This document shows, one piece after another, positions 5,710 to 46,058 of a stretch of 64,000 nucleotides of DNA. Source of the stretch: Anthoceros angustus. Taxonomy: Eukaryota; Plantae; Anthocerotophyta. A program made the position numbers and the translations under genes. The DNA is taken from positions 1,116,001 to 1,180,000 of the forward strand of contig MU008174.1 of NCBI GenBank assembly GCA_010909165.1, given 5' to 3'. Under the pieces are notes generated by a model. It ran no database searches and had not been told where the DNA came from. It saw only the letters and a list, made by a program, of their open reading frames with translations. Every line of letters begins with the position of its first letter. Position 1 is the stretch's first letter.

Positions 5710-6726
5710 TCATTTCTTGAAGATGTTCTTGATCTCTCCTGAGCTTACCAGCTCCTCTAAGACATCAGCTCCTCCGACGAACTCCCCCTTGACATAGAGC
5801 TGCGGAATGGTAGGCCACTGGCTGTATGTCTTGATGGCGTCCCTCACGCCTCGGTTGTGCTCCTCATCAAGAACATTGACAGTCTCGTAATCCACACCCT
5901 GCTCGTTCAAGATGGTGAGCACCTTGTGCGAAAATCCGCACTGAGGAGCTGTACGAGGCCCTTTGATGAAGGCAACAACAGAGTGCGACTTCACCACAGT
6001 GTCCAGCAGCTGCTCCAAGGTGATATTCAGCTTGGTGTCAGCCCTCGGCATGAGCTTCAGGTCAGGTTTCACTCGCTTCGCCTTCCTCTCTGTCCAGGTG
6101 GAGTTGCCCTGCACATTCCCCACAGGAACCTTGCCTGTTGCATCGATGTGCTCCTGCATCCAGGCCTGCCATGCTTCCGAGAGCGCTGCCCGATCTGGAG
6201 CATCTATGACATCAACCTGTAGGATTCAGAGAGGGCAGCATCAGCAACGGGACCAGGCCAATCAACCCTAGCCTTGCTACAACCAGGCCATCCAGCAGGG
6301 ACGGGGTAATGGACCAGGCACCTTGACAGAGCCGCAGAGTTCGGGAAGCTCCTGCAGGTGGTACTGGATGCTGGTGGAGACGCGTCTCGACAGCCCGACG
6401 TACTGGAGCTCGCCTTCTTTGTCGTACACAGCGTACACGCCGGGCGAAGCAGGAAATTCATTCGCCTTGCCATCTTCCCCGACGAACGGCGCGGCCTCAA
6501 CCTCCTGAATCTTCCTCACTGCGCGCACAAGGAGCGTTCGCGGCCCAGACGCATCCCTGCTTCTGGAGGAGGAGATGGACAGATGCGGTAGGCCCGGTCT
6601 CTGGATCCGATCCCGGAACGAGATCCTTGTCTGCCAGAAGGGTGCCCCGGAGCAAGAGATGCCTCGCCACGCGCTGGGACGGGCTGGACCAGAGGTGCAG
6701 GCGGTGGATGTGATCGTGGACGCCAT
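5710..6726 (-). CDS. GRXS16: Chloroplast monothiol glutaredoxin with N-terminal GIY-YIG-like domain; 2 exons (6726-6322, 6216-5710)
   Basis: Transit peptide, then 'PGVYAVYDKEGELQYVGLSRRV' (GIY-YIG-like), then a CGFS active site and 'SQWPTIPQLYVKGEFVGGAD'. GT-AG intron 6321-6217. Confidence 0.95.
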
Positions 6727-11929: not shown

Positions 11930-13242
11930 ATGGCGGTGGCAGTGTGGGCAGCTGGGCAAGTGGCGGCTGCGGGCTACAATGCTCTCAGTTCTGGGAGGGC
12001 GCAGCCGGGTGTGGGCATAGCGCAGCTCCGGAGCACCTTCCATGGCTGCTCTCCTCCCTTCCTGGGTGCCTCCAGGTCCGGGTTTCAAGGCCAGAGTTGC
12101 GTGGACTCGAGCCTGGTGCGAGAGGCTGGAGCTGAGGACAGGAAGGGACGGCTGACCACCTGCATGGCCTGGGGAGGGGCTTTGGCTGCTGTTCGTCTCA
12201 TCATCCAGGGCAAGAATTTGGAGGTAACGGCTCCCCGGGGAGTGTGAGGTGAAGTCCGAATTGAGGCTCTGCGTGGGCGGGCTTAGCGTTTGCTGACATG
12301 TTGGCTGCAGTTGACGGACTCGATCAAGGCGTATGTCGAGGACAAGGTGGGTAATGCTGTCCAGAATCACGGCAATCTTGTCAGGGAAGTGGATGTGCGA
12401 CTGTCGGTTCGTGGTGGTGAGACTGGCCGTGGCCAAAAGCTTCAGAGATCGGAGGTATGAGTATTGGGTTCACTAGTTATTGTCTTGGGAGGAGTGTCTC
12501 TATCAGTTTGCGAGTTTGTGGTGGGCTCCCATGTTGATAATGTTGATGGTTGCGTTCTGTACAGGTCACGTTGTTCACTAAGAAGCATGGAGTGGTGCGA
12601 GCAGAAGAGGAGTCCGACAGCATGTATGCGAGTATTGATAGGGTATCTGACGTCATATCCAGAAAGCTCCGCAAAATCAAGGAGAAAGATGGTGGACAAG
12701 GCCGCACGTACAAAATGCGACACCAGCAGTCCCGTATCGGAGAACTTCTCTCGGATCAAGTGGTTGACCTGGCACCCATTCTAAGGAAAGAGCCTGATGA
12801 CGAGTTGCCGGATGAGGTATGTGTCAGCTTGTATGCCAAGCACTGCTAGGGGGCGCACGTGCTTGTTGTTTCTGATTCCCGCTGATTACCCCTGTCTGCT
12901 TCCTTCTCAGGTGGTGAGAACCAAGTACTTCGACATGCCACCCATGGGGGTTGAAGAGGCTCTGGAGCAATTGGTGAACGTGGGCCATGACTTCTACGCC
13001 TTTCGCAATTCTGACACAGGTAACGAAGATTTCTCCAGATCGGGCTTGCTCCGGACTTTCACGTCTTCCGAACTCAGTTCCTTCCGCCTTTTACAACCGT
13101 TCCGTCTGGCTGACATCTTGTTCTGTTTCTATCAGGCGAGATTAACATCCTGTACAAACGAACACACGGTGGATATGGAATGATCGTGCCCAGGAATGAG
13201 GGCTCGTGGGAAACCTCGAAGAATGGCGCACCCAAGAAATGA
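11930..13242 (+). CDS. PSRP1: Plastid-specific ribosomal protein 1 / ribosome hibernation factor (HPF/pY family); 5 exons
   Basis: '[21 protein letters not shown]|[14 protein letters not shown]...[13 protein letters not shown]...|[25 protein letters not shown]...RKLRKIKEK...|[11 protein letters not shown]...HDFYAFRN..|[14 protein letters not shown]'. TGA at 13240-13242. Confidence 0.95.
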
Positions 13243-14075
13243 TGGGGAGCTTGTTCCAAAGTGATCTGCGTTGAATTATGTTATCAGGTACTTCTTTCTT
13301 CAGCAGCACTAGATGGCAAAACTGCTACAGAAGGACCTAGGAAGCCATATCGAGTGACAGCGTAGCTGAATGTGGATGTCTATACGTCCAAGACTGCAAC
13401 CACACAGAGTACCTAGATACAACATGATTCATCTTTTCTGGAAGTAGAACTGGGTGCCATCCGCATGTTTCCTGCCATCAGAAACGCCAGAGAGGAGCAC
13501 TGCGTCAGGGGAGCAGAGGGCACCATGCCAATTTAGTGTGAATTTGCTGTTCGTGTCATGGAGAGCTTTTGACCCTCCAAGAGGCTTCGGTTGGTTGGTT
13601 CAAAGAAAATAAATGCACGGAAAGGACGAGGCCCTCTGCAGCTTCCAAACTCTTCCCACGAATTCTTATTTCTACAAAAGAGGGTTTTCTATTTAATCGA
13701 CGTCGTTTGGTACCCACTACTTACTTAGACGTCTTTTCCCTGCAAGTCACACGTTGACGACCCTCTGCAAAGGAACAAAGGTTTTCAGGTGGTCTCAAGA
13801 AGAGGCACCTGTGGAGGGCCCCAGGAAAGGACAAACTTAACTATCCAGCTTGGGAGTTGCCTGGCCATGGAGATGCCTAGTTGCAATTGGAGACCCTGTG
13901 TGAAAGCCACGCTGTGCTTGTGGCGCAAAACAAACCACTAAAACTTGGGACTTCCCGATGAATGTACATACATGCACCCTGGAAAATGGCGGGATGCCAC
14001 TACACCGGGGATATTAAAACTCAAATGCTGAAACTCATAATTAATTCTTGCCGTCTTACTGCAGTTCCGACAGGA

Positions 14076-17000
14076 TCAAGGCTCTACCCGGAGTAGATTG
14101 TTTTGGACACTGGCGTCGCGCATAACCATCTCCCTCCGGTGGTCGATGGTCCAATTGCCATCCACGATGAACTTGATCTCATAAACTCCAGGGTAGAGCA
14201 GCAAGTCCAGACCCCAAAGCATGGGTCCTCGAGAACCGTCAAAATTGGGTATCTCAGACCTGAGATCTGGCTGAAATGCGAAAAAATGTTGCCAACCATT
14301 AAAACTGCCAGCCAGTTCGACTTTGGTGCCTTCCCCCCACCATTCAACAGACACCTTCTTGAGCCGTGACACGGCCACCTCAGCATCCTTCAACTTCCTC
14401 CTCTCCTCTTCCAATTCCACCTTAGCTTGGGCAATATCCGTGGAAACTTTGCCTTGCACAAGCATAAGCTCAGCTTTCATTTCTAGCAGCTCTTGTCTAA
14501 GGCTGAAGACCTCTGCTTCTCGGAGTTGCAGGGCTGATTTCAGGCTATCAATCTCAATCTGTGCCTGTTCCTGGAGCTGGACATCTAGCTCCTTTCGTTT
14601 CTCTGCCAACCGGCCTATTTCTTGCTGCTTGGCCAAAATGCTGAAGATAATCCGGTCTCTATCCTGCTGCTTGGAAGTTGCGTCCAAAGCAGACTCCAGC
14701 TGCAACTTTGCTTGCAGGATGGGACCCATTTGTGCAGCAATAGTCTCCTCCCTCTCTGGGACAACACTATCTGGCTGATCTGCTTCCCAAGAGAGACCAT
14801 CAGAGTGGTAGTCATAGTCTGCAATCCTCTCAGGGCCCTGAACACCATTCACAGCAAAGATTTCCTCCTTCGCTTCTCGAGAGTTCTGCTCGTCATCTGG
14901 CTGCAGGCCAGAGCTTGCAGTATCAAATTCTCCAAATGTTTCCGGCTTGGCAGGGTCATTCAGCGACAAAGTAAGATCGTTGTTAACTTTGTCCTCTAAG
15001 ACACCGGACTTCGTCTCATCCTTGTCTCGCCACTCAGTTCTTGCTCTGAGAGATTCTCGCAAGACTCTCAACCCTTCAGCACCTTTCCTAATCTCCAGCA
15101 GCTTCTGCCTCAACTGATCTCGAGTATCTCTTAGCTGCTTGGAAGATTCTTCTTGTTCTGTGCTAAGCTTACCAATACCGCCAGATAGGGTTTCAAAGCT
15201 TCCAGACTCTTCCACAATGCTCGGCAGACCTGTGCTCAAAAACAACCTTGCTCTTTCCTGGATTGACAAGTCAAAGACAGTCCTCTCATCCGGAACAGCC
15301 TGTGACTGCAGGTCAGATACAACAGGACTGTCACTTTCAGTCACCGAATTCACAGAACCTTGTTCTGAGACTGGAACAGAAGCCTGCTGTCCTAAATTCT
15401 CAGTCTCGAAGAGTTCTCCTTGTCCTGTACTCCTTCCAGACTCTTGCAGAATGCTCGACAGTCCCGTGCTGACAAACAGTCTTGCTCTTTCCTGGATTGA
15501 CAGGTCAAGTACAGACCTCTCATTTGAGACAACCTGAGACTGTAAGTCAGGTACAACTGGACTTACATTTTTTGTTCCCACATTTGTAGAGTCATGTTCT
15601 GTGACTGGAACGGAACTCTGCTCCACTGATCTCTCCTTCTCCGAAAGTTCTCCTTGTCCTGTATTCAGCTTTTTAATACCGCCAGATGTGGTTTCCAAGC
15701 TTGAAAGTCCTGTGCTCACAGACAACCTTGCTCTTTGCTCGATTGACAGGTCAAAGACAGACCCCTCGTCTAAAATAGCCTGACCTTGCAGGTCAGGTAC
15801 AGCAGGACTGGCACTTTCAATCCGCAGATTTGCAGAATCCTGTTCTGTGGCCAAGCCAGATCCCCCCTGCCATAAATTGTCCTGCTCAGAAACTTGTCCT
15901 GATTCTGTATCCAGCTTACCAATATCACACAATGGAGTTTCCGAGCTTCCAAGCTCTGCCGAAAGGCTAGACAGACCTGTGTTCACAAACAGACTTGCTC
16001 TTTCCTCAATTGGCAGGTCCCAGTCAGACCTCTCATCTAAACCAGCCTGAGATTGTAGCTCCTGTACAACAGGACTGTCCCTTTCAGTCCGCATACTTGC
16101 AGACTCTTGCTCTGTGATTGGGACAGAACCCTGCTGTCCTAATTTCTGCCTCTCGGCAAAATCTCCTTCTATTGTACTCAGCTTGCCAATATCACCAGAT
16201 GGGGCTTCAAAACTTCCCGAACTCAGAAACAACCTTGCTCGTTCCTCGATTGACAGGTCCAAGACAGACCTCTCATCTGAACCAGCCTGAGATTGTGGCT
16301 CCTGTACAACAGGTCTGTCATTTGCAGTCCACAGATCTGCAGACTCTTGCTCTGTTGTTGGAACAGAACCCTGCTGTCCTGATTTCTGCATCTCCGTAAA
16401 TTCTCCTCCTGCTGTATTCAGCATGCCGATACCACCAGATGGGGCTTCAAAGCTTTCTGTGCTTGGAAACAACCTTGCTCTATCCTCAATTGATAGGTCA
16501 AAGACAATCCTCTCATCTGAACCAGCCTGCGATTGTAGCTCCTGTACAACAGGACTATCACTTTCAGTCCACAGTTCTGCAGACTCTTGCTTTGTGCTAG
16601 GAACAGAACCCTGCTGGCCTAATTGTTCCTTCTCAGCAAATTCTCCTTCTGCTGTATTCGGCTTGCCGATACCACCAGATGAGGCTTCCAAGCTTCCTGT
16701 GCTCAGAAACAACCTCGCTCTTTCCTCAATAGACAGGTCCAAGACAGACCTCTCATCTGAACCAGCCTGAGATTGTAGCTCCTGTACAACAAGACTGTCA
16801 CTTTCAATCGGCAGATTTGCAGACTCTTGCCCTGTGATTGGAACAAAACCCTGCTGTCCAAATTTCTCCTTTTTGGAAAATTCTCCTTCCGCTGTATTCA
16901 GCTTGCCGATATCACCAGATAGAACTTCAGAGCTGCCCGACTCTTCCAAAGGGCTTGACAGTCCCTTGCTCGCAGACAGCATTTCTCTTTCATACACTAG

Positions 17001-18665
17001 CAGATCAAAGACATAACTCACATCTGAAACAGCCTGAGATTGTGGGTCAGGTGCACCCAGACTGACACTCGCAGTCTCAAAATTTTCAGAATCCTGTTCT
17101 GTGACAGGAGCAAAACCCTGCTGTTCCGAAGCAAGCCCCTCACTGCGGGAAATGTCAGGTTGCTGTACTCCGGTTTCAGAGCTTGCAGACTCTTGTACAC
17201 TGGACTCTTCCAAAAGGCTTGGCAGTCCTGTGCTAGCAAATACCCTTGCTCTTTCCTCCAATGACAGGCTTGAGACAGATTTATCCTCTGCAACAGCCTC
17301 ATATCGAGGGGGTTGCACTACAGGACTGACATCGTCCACGTGCTGCAAATCTCCCGCATCCAAGACTGGGGACACAGAAGCTTCTTGACCGATCGCCAGA
17401 TCCTCGCTTAGTGAAGCCGAAGCAACTGGTTCTGTGGAACTGGAGCTTGGAGTTTGTTCCAGGAGACTGGTCTGTCCTGTAGTCACAAGCAATCTCGCTC
17501 TTTCCTCTAATGACAAGTTTGGCACAGACCTTTCAGTTAAGCCAGCCTCAGGTTGCAGGCGCTGTTCACTAGGACTGACATTTTCTGTATCCTGTTCTGA
17601 TGCTGAGTCAGGGGCATCCTGCCCTAAGAAGGTCCATGCCTCGGTGGGCAAGGAAAAGTCCTCTTCTTGAAGAACTCCAGTTTCAAAGCTTGCCGACTCT
17701 CTTAAACTACTTGACTGTCCTGTGCTCACCCACAAGCTTACTTTTTCCTCTGATGACAAGACCGGGACAGACATCTCTTCTGAATCAACCTGAGGTGGCA
17801 GGCTCGATGCCACAGGACTTGAATCTTCCATTCCATGAAGAGTCAAAAGATCCTGTTGCGAGACTGAGGAGACAGAAGCCTCCTGCTCTGAGGCCAAAGG
17901 AGCCGCAGTCTCTAGCTTTAAAGAAAAACCAACGTCCTCCCCGAATTCTGGAACACCCACACTACTAGATGGCACCACCTGCTCAGCATTATCCTCAGCA
18001 ATCGCCTCACCTGGAGGTGTAGCAGCTCCGGGGTGCTGCCATGTCGCAATATTTGGTACAGAAGGGGAATCCGACCCTGGGGAGCTAAAGCTACTCCCCC
18101 TAACCTTTTCTGCAACCACATCCTCAATCTGCTCTCTCAGTGCTTGCTCTGACACCACCTCGACCTGCACACTCACGTTCACACTCGAAGTTACACTGCT
18201 GGTGAGCTCCCCCCTCCCAGCTCGGCCCCCACTATCAGAATCACTACTGCTCCCGCTGCTCCCTCCTCTCCGAAACCTGGGATTCCCAAGCATGCGGCTC
18301 ACAGCCTGGTACCCCCGACTCCGCACCGCATAAGCAAGATCCGAGCGACCCCTGCTCGTCAGCTCTTTGATAGACGGCAACTGGTTAGCCGGCAGATCTT
18401 GCTGTGCAATAAAGTTCTTCAACTGCTCCACCAGAAGAATGTCCTTCTTGCTGAGTTTTTCGCCCCCTATCTTCCTCCTCGCATGCCGGTTCCCCTGCCC
18501 AGAACTGCCAGAACTGGAGCAAGTTACGCGGCAAAATCCTTGTGTTCCACACCTTTCCCACGGCTGCTGCTGGAGCCGCACCCTGGCCTTCCAGCAGCTT
18601 CCCCGCTCCCCGACTCCCAGCACGAAAACGGGCTTCAAACTCCCAAGCCCGGCTGCCAACGCCAT
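14076..18665 (-). CDS. PROTEIN TARGETING TO STARCH 3-like (PTST2/3 family) CBM48 protein, 1529 aa, single exon, with large internal repeat expansion
   Basis: N-terminal family motif 'QLPSIKELTSRGRSDLAYAVRSRGY', a long coiled coil, and a C-terminal AMPK-beta-type CBM48 'VELAGSFNGW...LYPGVYEIKFIVDGNW...NNLLRV'. First ATG at 18665 (the track's 18698 start is TTG). PTST3 rather than PTST2 is judged from recalled CBM48 sequence. Confidence 0.85.
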   Translation of the reverse strand: MALAAGLGSLKPVFVLGVGERGSCWKARVRLQQQPWERCGTQGFCRVTCSSSGSSGQGNRHARRKIGGEKLSKKDILLVEQLKNFIAQQDLPANQLPSIKELTSRGRSDLAYAVRSRGYQAVSRMLGNPRFRRGGSSGSSSDSDSGGRAGRGELTSSVTSSVNVSVQVEVVSEQALREQIEDVVAEKVRGSSFSSPGSDSPSVPNIATWQHPGAATPPGEAIAEDNAEQVVPSSSVGVPEFGEDVGFSLKLETAAPLASEQEASVSSVSQQDLLTLHGMEDSSPVASSLPPQVDSEEMSVPVLSSEEKVSLWVSTGQSSSLRESASFETGVLQEEDFSLPTEAWTFLGQDAPDSASEQDTENVSPSEQRLQPEAGLTERSVPNLSLEERARLLVTTGQTSLLEQTPSSSSTEPVASASLSEDLAIGQEASVSPVLDAGDLQHVDDVSPVVQPPRYEAVAEDKSVSSLSLEERARVFASTGLPSLLEESSVQESASSETGVQQPDISRSEGLASEQQGFAPVTEQDSENFETASVSLGAPDPQSQAVSDVSYVFDLLVYEREMLSASKGLSSPLEESGSSEVLSGDIGKLNTAEGEFSKKEKFGQQGFVPITGQESANLPIESDSLVVQELQSQAGSDERSVLDLSIEERARLFLSTGSLEASSGGIGKPNTAEGEFAEKEQLGQQGSVPSTKQESAELWTESDSPVVQELQSQAGSDERIVFDLSIEDRARLFPSTESFEAPSGGIGMLNTAGGEFTEMQKSGQQGSVPTTEQESADLWTANDRPVVQEPQSQAGSDERSVLDLSIEERARLFLSSGSFEAPSGDIGKLSTIEGDFAERQKLGQQGSVPITEQESASMRTERDSPVVQELQSQAGLDERSDWDLPIEERASLFVNTGLSSLSAELGSSETPLCDIGKLDTESGQVSEQDNLWQGGSGLATEQDSANLRIESASPAVPDLQGQAILDEGSVFDLSIEQRARLSVSTGLSSLETTSGGIKKLNTGQGELSEKERSVEQSSVPVTEHDSTNVGTKNVSPVVPDLQSQVVSNERSVLDLSIQERARLFVSTGLSSILQESGRSTGQGELFETENLGQQASVPVSEQGSVNSVTESDSPVVSDLQSQAVPDERTVFDLSIQERARLFLSTGLPSIVEESGSFETLSGGIGKLSTEQEESSKQLRDTRDQLRQKLLEIRKGAEGLRVLRESLRARTEWRDKDETKSGVLEDKVNNDLTLSLNDPAKPETFGEFDTASSGLQPDDEQNSREAKEEIFAVNGVQGPERIADYDYHSDGLSWEADQPDSVVPEREETIAAQMGPILQAKLQLESALDATSKQQDRDRIIFSILAKQQEIGRLAEKRKELDVQLQEQAQIEIDSLKSALQLREAEVFSLRQELLEMKAELMLVQGKVSTDIAQAKVELEEERRKLKDAEVAVSRLKKVSVEWWGEGTKVELAGSFNGWQHFFAFQPDLRSEIPNFDGSRGPMLWGLDLLLYPGVYEIKFIVDGNWTIDHRREMVMRDASVQNNLLRVEP
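15170..17900 (-). repeat. 11 in-frame tandem repeats of ~234-267 bp (~78-89 aa) inside the PTST3-like ORF
   Basis: Core motif (D/N/S)LS(I/L)(E/Q)ERARLF(L/V)STG recurs on the + strand near 15246, 15479, 15726, 15993, 16233, 16473, 16713, 16980, 17243, 17493 and 17737. Three central units are exactly 240 bp. Confidence 0.95.
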
Positions 18666-19053
18666 TTTTCCAGTGTTGCGGGCTCTGTGCAGACTCAATC
18701 CATCCTGGCTGGACCGTTATGCGATCCCCGGCTCATGCATGGGCTCCTGTTGCTCGCATCGGGGTGTCCTGCTTATCCTCAAGTCAGACCCTGCTTAGAA
18801 ATTGAATTGCGCGGTAAGATGAGGCCTGACGGAAGTGCTGGCTCACACGATGCAGTGCATAGACAACCAAGGCCACAAATTTCGTCCATAGCAGGGAGAT
18901 CGCGAGCCCGCCAGTAGGGTTGAGGACAACACCGCCGCAGTCTCATCGTCCCGGTTATCGCAACACACCATAACGGCATTGACTTTTTAAGAGCGTCCTT
19001 TCCGGAACTGTCCGGACTCTGGAAAGTGAAGCTCTCTTGTGTCGGACGCCAAA

Positions 19054-39973: not shown

Positions 39974-42900
39974 TGTGGGCTACGGACTTCCCTTGGGGGT
40001 TAGGAAATAAGTGGGGTTTTGTTTTTTCAGAGGTCCAAGAATAAAATAAGGCGAAAAGGAGGAATAAGCGCGATGGTCGACTGCGAGTATACTCCGGACC
40101 GAGTGGTAACGGACCGTACCACTACGACGAGCTACGGATCGCGACCGGGTATCGGATAAGTCCGACCCCACTCCGGTCAAAACAGATAAGTACGCCAGGA
40201 AAGTAATTTAGAAGTTGAGTCGTGAGACAGATCGCCACGTGGACGGCCCCGAGTGGAGGTCGCATGCAGCAGCCAGACCGAGCCTTGCCAGGGGCCAGGC
40301 AGGTATTCACGCCTGGATCGGCGGCAACAGGCCGAGGCAGGCACGCGCGCGTAAGGTCGAGTAAGCCATGCACTCGCGCCATAGTGGAAGAGGCACCTCC
40401 CGCCGTTATTTCCAACGGCGCCGACGAGGAGGGTCATTTCGCGGCGACTCGAGACACCGCAGCCTCTGCGCCCGCAACCCGCCTCGCGCTATCTCTTGAA
40501 CGCCAGCATCTGCTCACCGCTAGTTGGAGCAACGAAGAAAGAGGGCGATCGTGCCCGATCTCGCACCGCCAAGAAAGGAGAAGAAGGCGATGGGACCCAA
40601 GAAGGTCATGGAGGTATGGGAGCCATGGAACCCGGTAGAGCGCAACATTGTAACCCGCTATCCGGACTTTGGGCCATGGCCGGAGGAGGCGGAGGATTAG
40701 TCAAGAGTGGCACTTAGACGTGTTCCAGTGTCTGACGCTTGACAAGTCACCGGGTCCGGAGTTCGTCAAGATGTTGGCACGCCAACAAGGAGGTTCGGTC
40801 CAAGAACCTCCGGAGGATCCTGTGAGATGGACCTTGAGGTCCCGAGGCGGCTTACAACCGCCCAACGGAGGAGGTTGGGGCGAGTCCCAGCCCCTCAAGG
40901 CGAGGGAAAGATAGAGGCAGCGAGGGCGGCGATGCTGAAGCCCGGAACGCAGCGAACAACCAACGGTTGATGCCTGACCGGATGACAAGGGTGAGGGCGA
41001 GCCCGGATCATTGTCCACTGGAACTTGCTCACCAAGGTGGATCACCTTGGTGATAATTTATTGGTGTTCCTGCATGCGCTGCAGCGGGGCAAGAGGGCTG
41101 ACTTGGGAAGGATCATCTTCGCCAGTTCAGAGGCCCACAAGCCGAGGAGCGAGAAGCCACCGCTGTCTGACTATCCCCATACCCGATCCATGTATGGGGA
41201 CATTACCTCCAAGGATGGGGAGGTAGAGCGGCGCCCGGAAAGGGTTGGCGGCCCTACGAGCAGGCGGGCAAAGGCGCCCGAGGTAGAGGCCCGACCCCTA
41301 GGGCCAAACGGGTCCGGAGGAGGACGATCGAAGGGATACTGACTCCATACGCGAACGGACCCCTCACCACCTAGGGAAGTGTGGAAGATATCCCCGCCTC
41401 CTCCTCTTGGTGCCTCACGAGCAGCAAAGCAGGAGACCGACCCCAAACACCACCACAACGGCAGAGGAGCCCCGACGAACTCGGCAATCAAGAGGCGGAA
41501 GACGGTGCACCGCCAACGCAAAGACCCTGCGCTCAGGCCGCCGCCACGGAGTGGCAAGAGGTCAAGAGGCGTGAGAAGAGCGTAAAGGGACGCCGCCAAG
41601 GAGGTGGAGGTCACCGCAAGAACCCCACTCGAGCCGCCCCTGCCGCCGACCGGGAGAGGCAAGGCCGCAACCCCCTCACCCTCCGAGCCCTGTGACGTAA
41701 GAGGGCGAATAAGGAATTGGCCAAGAGGGCCAAGGAGGGAAGCTGACAATCGTGACCTAAGGGACCCGATTAGGTCCGAGAACCCACCGACTTGCTCCGA
41801 TCATGTGGAGGTCCTTGGCGACCGTGAGATGCCCGCCTCCCACTACGGACTTTTGGGGCCTCACCGGTGGCGGCCGTGGAAGAGACACGGCGGGTCCTGC
41901 CACATGGACGGGCCTGGGGTCTCGGGACAGAGAAGACCTGTGAAGTAGAAGCCACCAGAGGCGATGGTGCTCCTCCAGAGCAATTGGAGGCGGCCCAGAG
42001 GCGAGGAGGAAGGCGGGCTCGGCCGCATCAAGAAGGGAAACGCCGGAGGCCGAAGGGAAGTCCGTCCATTCGACAGACGACTAAATTCCTTCACCGGGTG
42101 AGCAGTACAGAGGCCCAAGCGCTGGTCAAGACCGCAGCGGAGAGGGGTAGCGCAGCAGAGGAGGCCCGGCGCAAGCGAGAAGGCTCGCGACCGGGAGGCG
42201 GCCTACCGACCAGCCAAGTCGGGCGCCTGTGAAGGCGGCGAGGAGGCGGAAGTCGCTAAGATCGACCGCGATCACTATCGGCGTGATCGAACCGTGGAGG
42301 GAGACGGCAGGATAGCCGCGCTAACTCAAGAAGGAGCAGGAGGCGGCGGAGGTGCGGCCATGCCGAGGAGAAGGAAGCCGCGACAAGGAGATGGAGGATC
42401 TCCTGACTCGATTCTAGGTGGAGCAACGGCGGAGATGGAAGACCGCAAGAGACCACAGGCTGCGGCTCAAGTTACCATTGAGAGGAATGGTAATCTGCGG
42501 GCGTGATCACGGATCACGAGCGAGAGATAAGCGGCTCCGGCTACTTGGCGGACGGAGGAGGTAAGGCGATGGAGCAGGGCGGGGCGTCGCGAAATGGAGA
42601 AGGACTGGCGAAGCAACGCAGAGTTGCCGGCCGTCTGGAGAGGAGATGGAGCTAAGGCCCGGGATGAGCAGGAGGCGAGCCTTTGGGGCCTTGAAAAGAA
42701 TGGTCCATTAAGGAAGGCGGAAGGGAGCGCCGCGCTATGGCGAAATGGAGAAGAGCCTGGAGGAGCAGGAGGCGGCGGGGACCCGTGTTCGTCAGGCGGC
42801 CCTTGTGGCCTCGCGAGATTCGGCCCGGCTCCGGAGCACCAATGGCGAAGGAGATAGGAGGAGGAAGGCGGAAGGGAGCGCCGCGCTAACTCCGGAGCAC

Positions 42901-45900
42901 CAATGGCGAAAGGAGTATCGGGTGCTCCGGGCACATGTGGAAGAGGCAATCCAGCAAATTGACTCGGATTTTGCCTACTACCGAGCTCCTTAAGGCATTG
43001 GAAGCCTCGGCGCCCGCTACACTGGGCCGGACCCCGGAAGGCTCGAGAAGGGATGAAGGGCATGGGGACAAAGACGGACCCTAGTGGCCTGTTTGGAGAC
43101 GAATGGGGAGAAGAGCCTGGAGGAGGTGACGCGCCAATACAACGGATCTCGTGGTAAGTCCACCGCAACCCGCCGGAGGATAGAGGCGGGCCCGAAGGCG
43201 CAAGGAAGCCAACCCACCCAAGACAAGGGTAGGGATGAGGGCCTAGCAAGAAGAGGTCCAGACAAGGGGTCCGGAGCTTGGGACCGGACCAGACAAGTTC
43301 GACCCCGAGGTCCGAACCCCAGAGATGAGACCGACCGGCAGACTGACAGGACTCAAGTTGACCCGGAGTCGAGACCGACCCCGAGGTCCTGACTCAGAAG
43401 CAAGGAGGAGTCCCTCCGACTTACTGGGGAGGCCAATGGTCTACCGGAGGGGACCCACCGGGGCTGGGGAAGACGTTAGGTAACGGGCGGCCGCCGACCG
43501 CCGAGCCCAACCCGGCTGTGATTCCGGAAGAGGAAGGGGTCCCGCCGGATCATCCGATTGGGTGCGCCGCAATCGCCGTGACGGGAGATTGACCACCAAT
43601 ACCGAGACGGAACCTGTGACCTTCCCAGCCCACCGACGAAGGAGATAGGAGGAGGAATAGGATGGTAGGCGGCCGACATGCATCGAGCTGGCCACCACCG
43701 TAATAGGTGTAATAAAGACGCCGACTTGGGCGTAGTATAAGAGGGCCGAGGCCGCAATAAATCATCTTCTCTTGGTGTTGATGCTGCTTGCACCTTGTGT
43801 GTCTTCATGCTAACGTGAGTCCCGAGTCATCGAAAGGTGCACGGCGCCTCCCGGAGAGATCGATCAAGGTCCCGTGACGGACCCCAAGGCCTGTAAGGGA
43901 TGAAGGGCATGGGGACAAAGACGGACCCTAGTGGCCCCTGCTTGGAGACGACGGCAAATGGAGAAGAGCCTCAGGAGTGGACGCCAATACAACGGATCTC
44001 GTGGTAAGTCCACCGCAACCCGCCGGAGGATAGGCGGGCCAAGGAGGAGGAGCCAACCCGACCCAAGACAAGGGCCTGGGTAGGGATGAGGCCTAGCAAG
44101 AAGAGGTCCAGACAAGGGGTCCGGAGCTTGGGACCGGACTAATAAGTTCGACCCCGAGGTCCGAACCCCAGAGATGAGACCGACCCCGAGGTCCGACTCA
44201 GGAATAAGCGCAGACTCCGGTTCGATTCGAGTCGAGACCGACCCCGAGGTCCCGACTCGAAGCAAGGAGGAGTCCCTCCGACTTACGCCTGGGAGCAGGC
44301 CAGCGGCCCTATCGGGGGGACCCACCGGGGCTGGGGAAGACGTTAGGTAACGGGCGGCCGCCGATCACCGCCGAGCCCAACCCGATGTGATTCCGGAAGA
44401 GGAAGGGGTCCCGCCGGATCATCCGATTGCGCCGCAACTGCCGTGACGGAGATTGACCACCAATACCGAGACGGAACCTGTGACCTTCCCAGCCCACCGA
44501 CGAAGGAGATAGGAGGAGGAATAGGATGGTAGGCGGCCGACATGCATCGAGCTGGCCACCACCGTAATAGGTGTAATAAAGACGCCGACTTGGGCGTAGT
44601 ATAAGAGGGCCGAGGCCGCAATAAATCATCTTCTCTTGGTGTTGATGCTGCTTGCACCTTGTGTGTCTTCATGCTAACGTGAGTCCCGAGTCATCGAAAG
44701 GTGCACGGCGCCTCCCGGAGAGATCGATCAAGGTCCCGTGACGGACCCCAAGGCCTGTAAGGGATGAAGGGCATGGGGACAAAGACGGACCCTAGTGGCC
44801 CCTGCTTGGAGACGACGGCAAATGGAGAAGAGCCTCAGGAGTGGACGCCAATACAACGGATCTCGTGGTAAGTCCACCGCAACCCGCCGGAGGATAGGCG
44901 GGCCAAGGAGGAGAGCCAACCCGACCCAAGACAAGGGCCTGGGTAGGGATGAGGCCTAGCAAGAAGAGGTCCAGACAAGGGGTCCGGAGCTTGGGACCGG
45001 ACTGAGATAAGTTCGACCCCGAGGTCCGAACCCTAGAGATGAGACCGACCCCGAGGTCCCGACTCAGGAATAAGCGCAGACTCCGGTTCGATTCGAGTCG
45101 AGACCGACCCCGAGGTCCCGACTCGAAGCAAGGAGGAGTCCCTCCGACTTACGCCTGGGAGCAGGCCAGCGGCCCTATCGGGGGGACCCACCGGGGCTGG
45201 GGAAGACGTTAGGTAACGGGCGGCCGCCGATCACCGCCGAGCCCAACCCGATGTGATTCCGGAAGAGGAAGGGGTCCCGCCGGATCATCCGATGCGCCGC
45301 AACTGCCGTGACGGAGATTGACCACCAATACCGAGACGGAACCTGTGACCTTCCCAGCCCACCGACGAAGGAGATAGGAGGGGAGGAATAGGATGGTAGG
45401 CGGCCGACATGCATCGAGCTGGCCACCACTGCATTAGGGTAATAAAGACGCCGACTTGGGCGTAGTATAAGAGGGCCGAGGTCCCGAATAAATCATCTTC
45501 TTGGTGTTGATGCCGCTGCTTGCACCTCTGTGTCTTCATGCTAACGTGAGTCCCGAGTCATCGAAAGGTGCACGATACCGAGATCGATCAAGGTCCCGTG
45601 ACGACCCTAACGTGGTGGTGGTGTGTGGAAGAGCGATCGGGACCCGTGTTCGTCTGCAGCAGCCGCCCAAAGATCGCCGGACCGAACGTGTGAGCCGGAG
45701 GAACTCCGGAGGTGCAGAGAGCCCGAGAGGCCCGCTGAGCAACGGAGGAGGTCCGGATCGTAACCACTCATGCTCTTTCCAAGGTTGATGAGCGAGAGAG
45801 ATGAGAGGAACGGACTAAAGGAACGAGTGACGGCGGAACGATACGGACGCAAACGGGTCCTTAAACGCTTGGCCACACCGGCCTCGCTCGTGAACGTTAT

Positions 45901-46058
45901 GAGTAGTTAGACGAAACGACGATTGCGTGTTAAAGTTGAGCGACGCAGTAAGGTGAGAATCGTCGAAACGCTGCAAACGGAGCTTATCATTCTCTGAACG
46001 GACTCCTTACTACAACGACACGGATTGTGCTACCACGGTCACCGAAAGTCCCACCACA
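39974..46058. mobile_element. 6085-bp TG..CA-bounded insertion with 5-bp TSD (solo-LTR-like), no paired LTR or pol detected
   Basis: Starts TGTGGGCTAC and ends CCCACCACA. CCTTT is duplicated at 39969-73 and 46059-63. Excision restores transposase 'GPRTK|VMSYRG'. Confidence 0.85.
43030..45605. repeat. ~865-bp unit in three tandem copies inside the TG..CA insertion
   Basis: 'agggatgaaggg(g)catggggacaaagacggaccctagtgg' at ~43049, ~43897 and ~44760. Internal 'gaccccgaggtcc' subrepeats. Confidence 0.9.

What the first reader, a model, noticed from the sequence alone, without database searches (positions are those of the whole stretch)
14076..18665. PTST3-like starch-binding protein with 11 evenly spaced sticker-spacer repeats: candidate multivalent plastid scaffold / starch tether
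Seen: one 1529-aa ORF with a plastid-type N-terminus, the PTST2/3 N-terminal motif, about 900 aa made of 11 repeats (~80 aa), a coiled coil and a CBM48. Each repeat has a conserved predicted amphipathic helix (DLSIEERARLFLSTG) in an S/E/Q/G/P-rich low-complexity spacer. All repeat length variants preserve frame. Known: angiosperm PTST2/3 are roughly a third this size and act in starch granule initiation. Algal pyrenoid linkers (EPYC1, CsLinker, PYCO1) are disordered proteins with regularly spaced helical stickers, and Chlamydomonas SAGA1 joins a starch-binding domain, coiled coil and Rubisco-binding motif. Inference: this could be a land-plant multivalent tether linking starch to a condensate or enzyme array, e.g. 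Rubisco if the host is a pyrenoid-bearing hornwort, or starch synthase/initiation complexes. The species is not established from the sequence.
Basis: partly seen in the sequence, partly recalled or inferred. Interest (0 to 1): 0.85.

Follow-up and report, generated by a model that had tools for sequence, protein, structure and literature searches.

The report
Hornwort PTST3 with amplified helix motif
This is a hornwort's version of the plastid starch-granule-initiation protein PTST3, in which one short, very old helix found once in other plants' PTST3 has been copied 11 times in a row; this points to a many-handed starch scaffold, and nothing found here links it to Rubisco or the pyrenoid.

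Summary
Window 14076-18665 (minus strand) is one intact 1529-aa ORF. It has a basic N-terminus, the conserved PTST2/3 N-terminal domain, 11 units of 78-89 aa, coiled coil and a C-terminal CBM48. RNA-run contigs tile 13901-18894 with no joint, so the repeats are not spliced out.

The new point is that the "sticker" (LSIEERARLF-STG) is not a hornwort invention. The same motif occurs once in 75 of 95 PTST3-clade proteins, from the alga Chlorokybus through ferns and conifers to angiosperms, and in 0 of 32 PTST2-like proteins. The array is therefore a tandem amplification of an ancient PTST3-specific helix. There are 11 copies here and 4 in the one syntenic relative found; the organism is probably Anthoceros angustus, which I did not verify.

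AlphaFold predicts only that helix as ordered. Among copies the helix shows dN/dS about 0.19, against 0.6-0.8 for the spacers.

The Rubisco/pyrenoid reading is not supported:
- The array is strongly acidic (pI about 4.1), whereas known linkers are basic.
- It has no Chlamydomonas-type Rubisco-binding motif.
- The sticker is conserved in plants without pyrenoids.
- Published work reports no starch sheath in A. agrestis and gives the linker role to RbcS-STAR.

Best reading: a valency-amplified PTST3 scaffold on glucan or starch. It is a new variant of a known kind.

The parts
13901..18894 (-). Unspliced transcript of about 5 kb (5' UTR about 229 nt, 3' UTR about 175 nt)
   Evidence: RNA-run X1 contigs tile this span with 0 differences and no joint. 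Depth is 0 just outside it, while the DNA run X2 is covered there.
14076..18665 (-). Single-exon CDS of 1529 aa plus stop: PTST3 orthologue
   Evidence: tree.
18456..18665 (-). aa 1-70: basic, Ser/Gly/Arg-rich N-terminus (pI 10.9, net +9), like a plastid transit peptide
   Evidence: Composition only. Seed-plant orthologues are named 'chloroplastic' by NCBI. No targeting predictor was run.
18285..18449 (-). aa 73-127: conserved PTST2/3 N-terminal helical domain (LP..LPSIKELTSRGRSDLAYAVRSRGY)
   Evidence: BLASTP to more than 60 PTST3 proteins. 85-sequence alignment A3. AlphaFold2 gives 4 helices at pLDDT about 72. There is a weak likeness to HNH_repeat.
15165..17894 (-). aa 258-1167: array of 11 units of 78-89 aa, acidic (array aa 290-1165: pI 4.08, net -99)
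17718..17759 (-). Sticker 1 (aa 303-316, LSSEEKVSLWVSTG), the copy closest to the angiosperm consensus
17475..17516 (-). Sticker 2 (aa 384-397)
17226..17267 (-). Sticker 3 (aa 467-480)
16962..17003 (-). Sticker 4 (aa 555-568), degenerate
16695..16736 (-). Sticker 5 (aa 644-657)
16455..16496 (-). Sticker 6 (aa 724-737)
16215..16256 (-). Sticker 7 (aa 804-817)
15975..16016 (-). Sticker 8 (aa 884-897)
15708..15749 (-). Sticker 9 (aa 973-986)
15462..15503 (-). Sticker 10 (aa 1055-1068)
15228..15269 (-). Sticker 11 (aa 1133-1146). AlphaFold2 places the helix at IQERARLFLST, with a Ser N-cap and a Gly C-cap.
15030..15152 (-). aa 1172-1212: short charged stretch with heptad pattern just after the array
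   Evidence: Heptad and proline-free heuristic only.
14343..14657 (-). aa 1337-1441: conserved PTST coiled-coil region next to the CBM48
   Evidence: Heuristic. This region aligns to all PTST2/3 homologues.
14082..14354 (-). aa 1438-1528: CBM48 (AMPK1_CBM) glucan-binding module
   Evidence: Pfam E 2.9e-12.

Best explanation
What it is (about 0.9): the PTST3 orthologue (PROTEIN TARGETING TO STARCH 3 clade) of a hornwort, expressed from one 4.6-kb exon. PTST3 proteins carry, between the N-terminal domain and the coiled coil, one short helix (consensus LS-L-x-E-K/R-A/V-A-x-F-V/I-x-T/N-G) followed by acidic sequence. Here that helix and its flanking linker have been tandemly duplicated to 11 copies, against 4 in the only other syntenic relative found and 1 everywhere else. 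How it most likely works (about 0.45, inferred): the C-terminal CBM48 holds the protein on malto-oligosaccharides or the starch surface, and the coiled coil pairs it with itself or with other coiled-coil initiation proteins. Each helix is a docking site for the same conserved, still unidentified PTST3 partner. PTST2 is the published PTST3 interactor; SS4, MRC, MFP1, SS5 and ISA1 are other candidates. One chain could thus gather up to about ten partners on a long, acidic, flexible arm, concentrating granule-initiation machinery at glucan sites, possibly as a condensate like the one reported for rice FLO6/PTST2. Shown here: domain anatomy, clade, unspliced transcript, motif antiquity, constraint on the helix. 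Inferred: plastid location, binding by the helix, identity of the partner, the effect of valency.
For: CBM48 by Pfam. N-domain shared with PTST3 proteins. IQ-TREE places the protein and P0001 as sisters (100/98) inside the PTST3 clade, split from the PTST2-like clade at 100/100. Microsynteny with the PSRP1-like neighbour in L001. The motif occurs once in 75/95 PTST3-clade proteins of at least 400 aa and in 0/32 PTST2-like proteins, including Chlorokybus (LSLQERAALFVRTG), Cryptomeria, Taxus, ferns, Nymphaea, Olea, Eruca and Glycine. An exhaustive phmmer search of 1.84 billion representatives found, among the 150 best hits listed (of 333), array matches only in P0001. AlphaFold2 orders only the helix. 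Among copies dN/dS is 0.19 in the motif and 0.6-0.8 in the spacer. In R5-R11, 5 of 14 variable motif codon columns vary only synonymously, against 2 of 52 elsewhere, Fisher p 0.004. Length differences in congeners are all in frame. Literature: PTST2/3 act in granule initiation (PMC5996153, PMC10801857), and FLO6 forms starch-surface condensates that recruit clients (PMC13475482).
Against: No binding partner of the PTST3 helix is known, and none could be tested here because no multimer prediction was available. Liverwort and moss PTST3 lack a clear motif, so it can be dispensed with. Gene conversion or recent duplication could inflate the apparent conservation of the helix among R5-R8. The dN/dS estimates rest on 15 codons and on pairs that are not independent. 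Plastid targeting was not predicted with a dedicated tool. Species identity comes from earlier agents' notes, not from a test of mine.
Confidence: 0.55

Rival explanations
1. Self-associating scaffold: the helices bind a domain of PTST3 itself (the N-terminal helical domain or the coiled coil) in trans. The 11-copy chain would then cross-link PTST3 molecules into a homotypic network or condensate on starch, without an outside client.
For: FLO6/PTST2 phase-separates by itself in vitro (PMC13475482). The sticker and helix 1 of the N-domain share a loose pattern (L-x-x-E-x-x-x-x-F-I/L-x-x-x-G/D-L-P), by eye. The motif and the N-domain co-occur across PTST3 proteins.
Against: No contact information could be obtained. 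The pattern likeness is weak (5 of 16 identities). PTST2-like proteins keep the N-domain without the motif.
Confidence: 0.15
2. Mostly neutral expansion: replication slippage or unequal crossing-over enlarged a disordered linker. The copies add length (an entropic spacer or bristle) but no useful valency, and only one or a few helices matter.
For: Unit number and length differ between relatives: 11 units of about 80 aa here against 4 of about 118 aa in P0001, and in-frame gains and losses among congeners. R5-R8 are young, at 84% nucleotide identity. Copy 4 has decayed. Spacer dN/dS is 0.6-0.8.
Against: Ten of 11 copies keep the helix. Motif dN/dS is 0.19 with an excess of synonymous-only columns. 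P0001's array keeps two clean copies of the motif (ELSFHDRAKMYVETG, ELSIQERARMFMETG) and two diverged ones after deep divergence.
Confidence: 0.15
3. One reading: a pyrenoid-related tether or linker whose stickers bind Rubisco (or a pyrenoid component), joining starch to the Rubisco matrix as SAGA1/2 do, or condensing Rubisco as EPYC1 does.
For: The host is probably a pyrenoid-bearing Anthoceros (earlier notes). The arrays were found only in the two probable hornwort sequences. The regular sticker-spacer anatomy resembles known linkers. The published A. agrestis linker screen required pI above 8 and would have missed this protein (10.1101/2024.06.26.600872).
Against: The sticker is an ancient PTST3 motif kept in pyrenoid-less plants. 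The array is acidic, with 153 D+E against 54 K+R, unlike basic linkers. No [DN]W[RK]xx[LIVA] motif is present. A. agrestis pyrenoids have no starch sheath, and Rubisco co-IP found no linker (10.1101/2024.06.26.600872). RbcS-STAR is reported to induce Rubisco matrix formation (PMC13655443). RNA depth is modest, 11-25 against about 225 for the neighbouring gene.
Confidence: 0.07

Closest known systems
PTST3 (Arabidopsis At5g03420 and orthologues), PROTEIN TARGETING TO STARCH family
   Same: Same clade. Same order of parts: N-terminal helical domain, PTST3-specific helix motif, acidic linker, coiled coil, C-terminal CBM48.
   Different: 1529 aa against about 400-650 aa. The helix plus linker is present 11 times instead of once. 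It is encoded without introns. The function of the helix is undescribed even in Arabidopsis, as far as the 36 held papers that mention PTST3 show; I opened only a few of them.
PTST2 / FLO6 / BGC1
   Same: CBM48 plus coiled-coil scaffold of granule initiation. FLO6 forms condensates on the starch surface and recruits clients (PMC13475482). It shares the N-terminal domain.
   Different: A separate clade that already includes Chara and Selaginella. It lacks the sticker motif (0/32) and has no repeat array.
Pyrenoid linkers EPYC1, CsLinker, PYCO1
   Same: A disordered chain with short helices at regular intervals of about 50-90 aa.
   Different: Those are basic, lineage-specific and bind Rubisco, and they have no folded starch-binding or coiled-coil part. 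This array is acidic and its sticker is a conserved PTST3 motif. In hornworts the linker role is reported for RbcS-STAR (PMC13655443).
SAGA1 / SAGA2 of Chlamydomonas
   Same: A long plastid protein combining a starch-binding module, coiled coil and repeated short motifs.
   Different: By my own recollection, not checked here, SAGA proteins use CBM20. They carry Rubisco-binding motifs and serve a starch sheath (PMC13167743). This protein has CBM48 and no such motif, and A. agrestis has no sheath.

Membership tests
PTST3 clade of the PTST family | C-terminal CBM48 | tested here: met
   Pfam AMPK1_CBM, aa 1438-1528, E 2.9e-12.
PTST3 clade of the PTST family | Coiled coil directly before the CBM48 | tested here: met
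   Heptad and proline-free stretches at aa 1337-1441. This region aligns with all homologues. No dedicated coiled-coil predictor was run.
PTST3 clade of the PTST family | Conserved N-terminal domain (LP..VPS.KEL...GR.DLAN.VRRRGYK) | tested here: met
   BLASTP E 1e-9 to 1e-22 against PTST3 proteins; alignment A3.
PTST3 clade of the PTST family | Groups with named PTST3 proteins rather than PTST2-like ones | tested here: met
   IQ-TREE LG+C20, split 100/100; names.
PTST3 clade of the PTST family | PTST3-specific helix motif between N-domain and coiled coil (a feature defined here, not in the literature) | tested here: met
   Found in 75/95 PTST3-clade and 0/32 PTST2-like proteins; the query has 9 copies below iE 0.01 and 11 by eye.
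PTST3 clade of the PTST family | Plastid location, and action in starch granule initiation with PTST2 | not testable with these tools
   Only the N-terminal composition and the orthologues' names support it.
Rubisco linker of pyrenoids (EPYC1-type) | Disordered chain with regularly spaced helical stickers | tested here: met
Rubisco linker of pyrenoids (EPYC1-type) | High isoelectric point (screens use pI above 8) | tested here: not met
   pI 4.43 overall and 4.08 for the array; the criterion is from 10.1101/2024.06.26.600872.
Rubisco linker of pyrenoids (EPYC1-type) | Sticker binds Rubisco | not testable with these tools
   A Chlamydomonas-type motif is absent. No multimer prediction was available.
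Rubisco linker of pyrenoids (EPYC1-type) | Sticker confined to pyrenoid-bearing lineages | tested here: not met
   The motif is present in ferns, conifers and angiosperms.
SAGA1/2-type starch-pyrenoid tether | Starch-binding module plus Rubisco-binding motifs, in a host whose pyrenoid has a starch sheath | tested here: not met
   CBM48 is present, but there is no Rubisco-binding motif. A. agrestis is reported to have no starch sheath (10.1101/2024.06.26.600872).

The most novel reading that the evidence does not exclude
The amplified helix array turns hornwort PTST3 into a high-valency condensate scaffold. It would fix where the many starch granules of the single giant hornwort chloroplast are started, for example in the stromal spaces between pyrenoid subunits, by binding a thylakoid or pyrenoid-periphery partner rather than Rubisco itself. 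Copy number would then tune granule number or position.
Probability: 0.1. Interest if true: 0.8.

Novelty: new variant of a known kind. Interest (0 to 1): 0.55.

Why it matters
[quoted passage not shown] Only 36 of the held papers mention it, and none names it in the title. This locus does two things:
- It singles out a short helix that has been kept in the PTST3 clade since before land plants and is absent from PTST2-like proteins. That makes it a concrete, mutable candidate interaction site in Arabidopsis and in crops.
- It offers a natural valency series of 1, 4 and 10-11 copies for asking whether the number of docking sites sets how much initiation machinery gathers on glucan. The question is timely now that the paralogue FLO6/PTST2 is reported to act through condensates.

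For pyrenoid work the result is mostly negative: this is not a good Rubisco-linker candidate.

Tried and rejected
- **Full-length word-indexed search.** It returned only P0001 and three Brassica gene models that fuse E2F/DP with PTST3. No Anthoceros orthologue is in the protein collections, so copy number in congeners could only be glimpsed through read laying.
- **Species of P0001.** The run accession SRR33208241 is in no held paper, and organisms in the read tools are coded. I could not say whether the 4-copy relative, or organisms B-D, have pyrenoids.
- **Pfam WHIM1 hit.** No single stretch passes the threshold, and the best one falls on a sticker. It looks like weak matches summed over the repeats, so I rejected it.
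- **N-domain fold.** There is no PDB sequence match and no Foldseek PDB match with E below 1. An ESM Atlas shape search and Pfam at E up to 1 give only a weak HNH_repeat-like signal.
- **ESM Atlas feature search on four units.** It returned only generic low-complexity proteins, with scores of 0.65 or less.
- **My first strict regular expressions.** They missed both the N-motif and the single-copy sticker in other plants. BLASTP and a motif HMM found them.
- **Amino-acid invariance across all 11 copies.** It does not separate motif from spacer (p 0.47); only R5-R11 and dN/dS do.
- **Seung et al. 2017 (PMC5559754).** The paper is not held.
- **Unused or exhausted tools.** I did not use the third homologous-protein search, because searches showed the collections lack hornwort fragments.
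Full report
**1. The observation**

Window 14076-18698 on the minus strand is one open frame. From the first ATG (18665) it encodes 1529 aa, with the stop codon at 14076-14078. Pfam finds a CBM48 (AMPK1_CBM) at aa 1438-1528 with E 2.9e-12.

Tandem Repeats Finder reports 234/240-nt periods with 77-84% matches. A motif scan places 11 copies of an LS-I-E-E-R-A-R-L-F-x-S-T-G element at aa 303, 384, 467, 555, 644, 724, 804, 884, 973, 1055 and 1133, spaced 78-89 aa apart. Copy 4 is decayed and copy 1 is divergent. The whole unit aligns between copies, not only the sticker.

The composition is as follows:
- The whole protein has pI 4.43 and net charge -120.
- The array has pI 4.08 and net charge -99.
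- The first 70 residues are basic (pI 10.9), as expected of a transit peptide. I ran no targeting predictor.

Proline-free stretches with a heptad pattern lie at aa 1172-1212 and 1337-1441.

**2. Transcript**

One run labelled RNA, from the same sample as the best DNA run, holds 98% of the sampled words. Its contigs tile 13901-18894 with no difference and no joint. Their depth falls to 0 at 13681-13900 and beyond 18916, where the DNA run is still covered.

The 4.6-kb exon is therefore transcribed unspliced, and the repeats are not removed. The contigs are unitigs that break at shared words, so no single molecule was seen end to end.

Two related organisms at 90-95% identity differ in the array only by in-frame changes:
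- a 177-nt skip at 15167-15345, which removes about one unit;
- a net 84-nt skip at 16646-16738;
- a 6-nt insertion;
- a possible 447-nt duplication.

**3. Family**

The C-terminal 350 aa find bryophyte, lycophyte, fern and seed-plant proteins of about 400-600 aa. The named ones are all PTST3.

An exhaustive phmmer search of aa 330-1529 against 1.84 billion representatives gave 333 hits, of which the best 150 were listed. Among those, only P0001 (1064 aa, from a Logan assembly) matches the array. All the others match only the coiled coil and CBM48, and none is longer than 766 aa.

P0001 has the same N-terminus and four units of about 118 aa. Two of them carry clean copies of the motif (ELSFHDRAKMYVETG, ELSIQERARMFMETG) and two are diverged. 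It lies next to the same PSRP1-like gene as here, so it is an orthologue in a more distant relative. Both genes are intronless.

A careful IQ-TREE (LG+C20) splits the family at 100/100 support into two clades (names):
- A PTST2-like clade: Chara, Selaginella, a Picea-containing cluster and angiosperm proteins of about 530 aa.
- A PTST3 clade: Spirogloea, liverworts, mosses, Diphasiastrum, ferns, Cryptomeria PTST3 and angiosperm PTST3.

The query and P0001 are sisters (100/98) inside the PTST3 clade.

**4. The key result: what the sticker is**

A profile of the sticker found the same motif once per protein in other PTST3 sequences. A wider scan and a second profile showed it in 75 of 95 PTST3-clade proteins of at least 400 aa, and in 0 of 32 PTST2-like proteins. 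It always lies between the N-domain and the coiled coil, and acidic residues usually follow it.

Examples:

| Organism | Motif |
|---|---|
| Chlorokybus atmophyticus | LSLQERAALFVRTG |
| Cryptomeria | SLRERAAYFVRTG |
| Adiantum | ELRRKAAEFVRTG |
| Nymphaea | ISLHEKAARFVMTG |
| Olea | LSLQEKVAQFIQNG |
| Eruca | SSIEEKTTRFIQNG |

Liverworts and mosses have at best a diverged version. The sticker is thus a PTST3-specific element older than land plants, and the hornwort array is its tandem amplification.

**5. Is the sticker constrained?**

AlphaFold2 on one unit, with the 15 repeat copies as its alignment, predicts only IQERARLFLST as a helix (pLDDT 70-80). The rest scores below 55.

Between copies, dN/dS is 0.19 for the motif and 0.6-0.8 for the spacers. 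In R5-R11, 5 of 14 variable codon columns in the motif change only synonymously, against 2 of 52 elsewhere (Fisher p 0.004).

These figures rest on few sites and on pairs that are not independent, and gene conversion cannot be excluded.

**6. Organism and the pyrenoid idea**

Earlier agents of this scan called the genome Anthoceros angustus or an Anthoceros-type hornwort. That fits the 2019 runs, but I did not verify it.

The following points weigh against the Rubisco or pyrenoid reading:
- A. agrestis pyrenoids are reported to lack a starch sheath. A Rubisco co-IP and a proteome scan that required pI above 8 found no linker (10.1101/2024.06.26.600872).
- Rubisco condensation is attributed to RbcS-STAR, which also works in pyrenoid-less A. 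fusiformis and in Arabidopsis (review PMC13655443).
- The array here is acidic and has no [DN]W[RK]xx[LIVA] motif.
- The sticker is kept in plants without pyrenoids.

The Rubisco-tether reading is therefore unlikely, at about 0.07. It is not excluded, because no binding test was possible and I could not learn which relatives have pyrenoids.

**7. Mechanism**

PTST2 and PTST3 promote starch granule initiation. PTST2 binds long malto-oligosaccharides and SS4, and is placed by MFP1 (PMC5996153, PMC10801857). By my own recollection of Seung et al. 2017, which is not held in the library, PTST3 interacts with PTST2. Rice FLO6/PTST2 forms condensates on the starch surface that recruit GBSS1 (PMC13475482).

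The best-supported reading is a valency-amplified PTST3:
- The CBM48 sits on glucan.
- The coiled coil mediates pairing.
- About ten equivalent helices on a flexible acidic arm each dock the conserved partner of the PTST3 helix.

The partner is unknown.

**8. Verdict**

This is a new variant of a known kind. Its value is that it exposes an uncharacterised, ancient PTST3 motif and a natural series of 1, 4 and 10-11 copies with which to test it.

Noticed in passing
window 18285-18449 (-), aa 73-127; alignment A3: The conserved N-terminal domain of PTST2/3 is predicted as a small 4-helix module. In the ESM Atlas its shape recurs in plant and algal COQ10/Polyketide_cyc-domain proteins and in bacterial and phage HNH_repeat proteins. 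36 of 85 PTST3 N-domains weakly hit Pfam HNH_repeat (best E 2.8e-4), though this window's own copy does not. No PDB match was found.
   Followed up: partly
window 12622-13180 (+); L001 7472-8051: A PSRP1-like gene (Ribosom_S30AE_C) lies tail to tail with the PTST3 gene both in this genome and in the relative's contig. Its RNA contig depth is about 225, against 11-25 for PTST3.
   Followed up: partly
window 5713-6726 (-); L001 1776-2885: A glutaredoxin gene and its neighbour (82% and 57% aa identity to L001 genes) lie on the other side of PSRP1 here, but upstream of PTST3 in L001. This is a local rearrangement between the two relatives.
   Followed up: no
P0001 aa 330-700 (L001 3802-6996): The relative's units of about 118 aa carry a second conserved element, G-W-A/S-R-x-D, about 20 aa after each sticker. 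This window has G-G-I-G-K-L at that position. Its meaning is unknown.
   Followed up: no
P0002-P0004 (Brassica gene models): Three Brassica proteins of about 950 aa join E2F/DP domains to a PTST3 body. They are probably fusions of two adjacent genes in the annotation, not a real architecture.
   Followed up: no
window 18380-18440 and each sticker: Helix 1 of the N-domain (LLVEQLKNFIAQQDLP) and the sticker (LSIEERARLFLSTGLP) share a loose pattern, 5 of 16 identities. It may be chance, or the sticker may derive from or mimic that helix.
   Followed up: no
window 40001-46000: A block with 60-62% G+C and AT skew of 0.24-0.31, unlike the rest of the window (about 50% G+C). An earlier first-reader note (s1-278191) flags an insertion there.
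   Followed up: no
P0145 (Rhamnella rubrinervis, 582 aa): This is the only non-hornwort PTST3 seen with two sticker-like motifs (aa 191 and 360), so small duplications of the element also occur in angiosperms.
   Followed up: no
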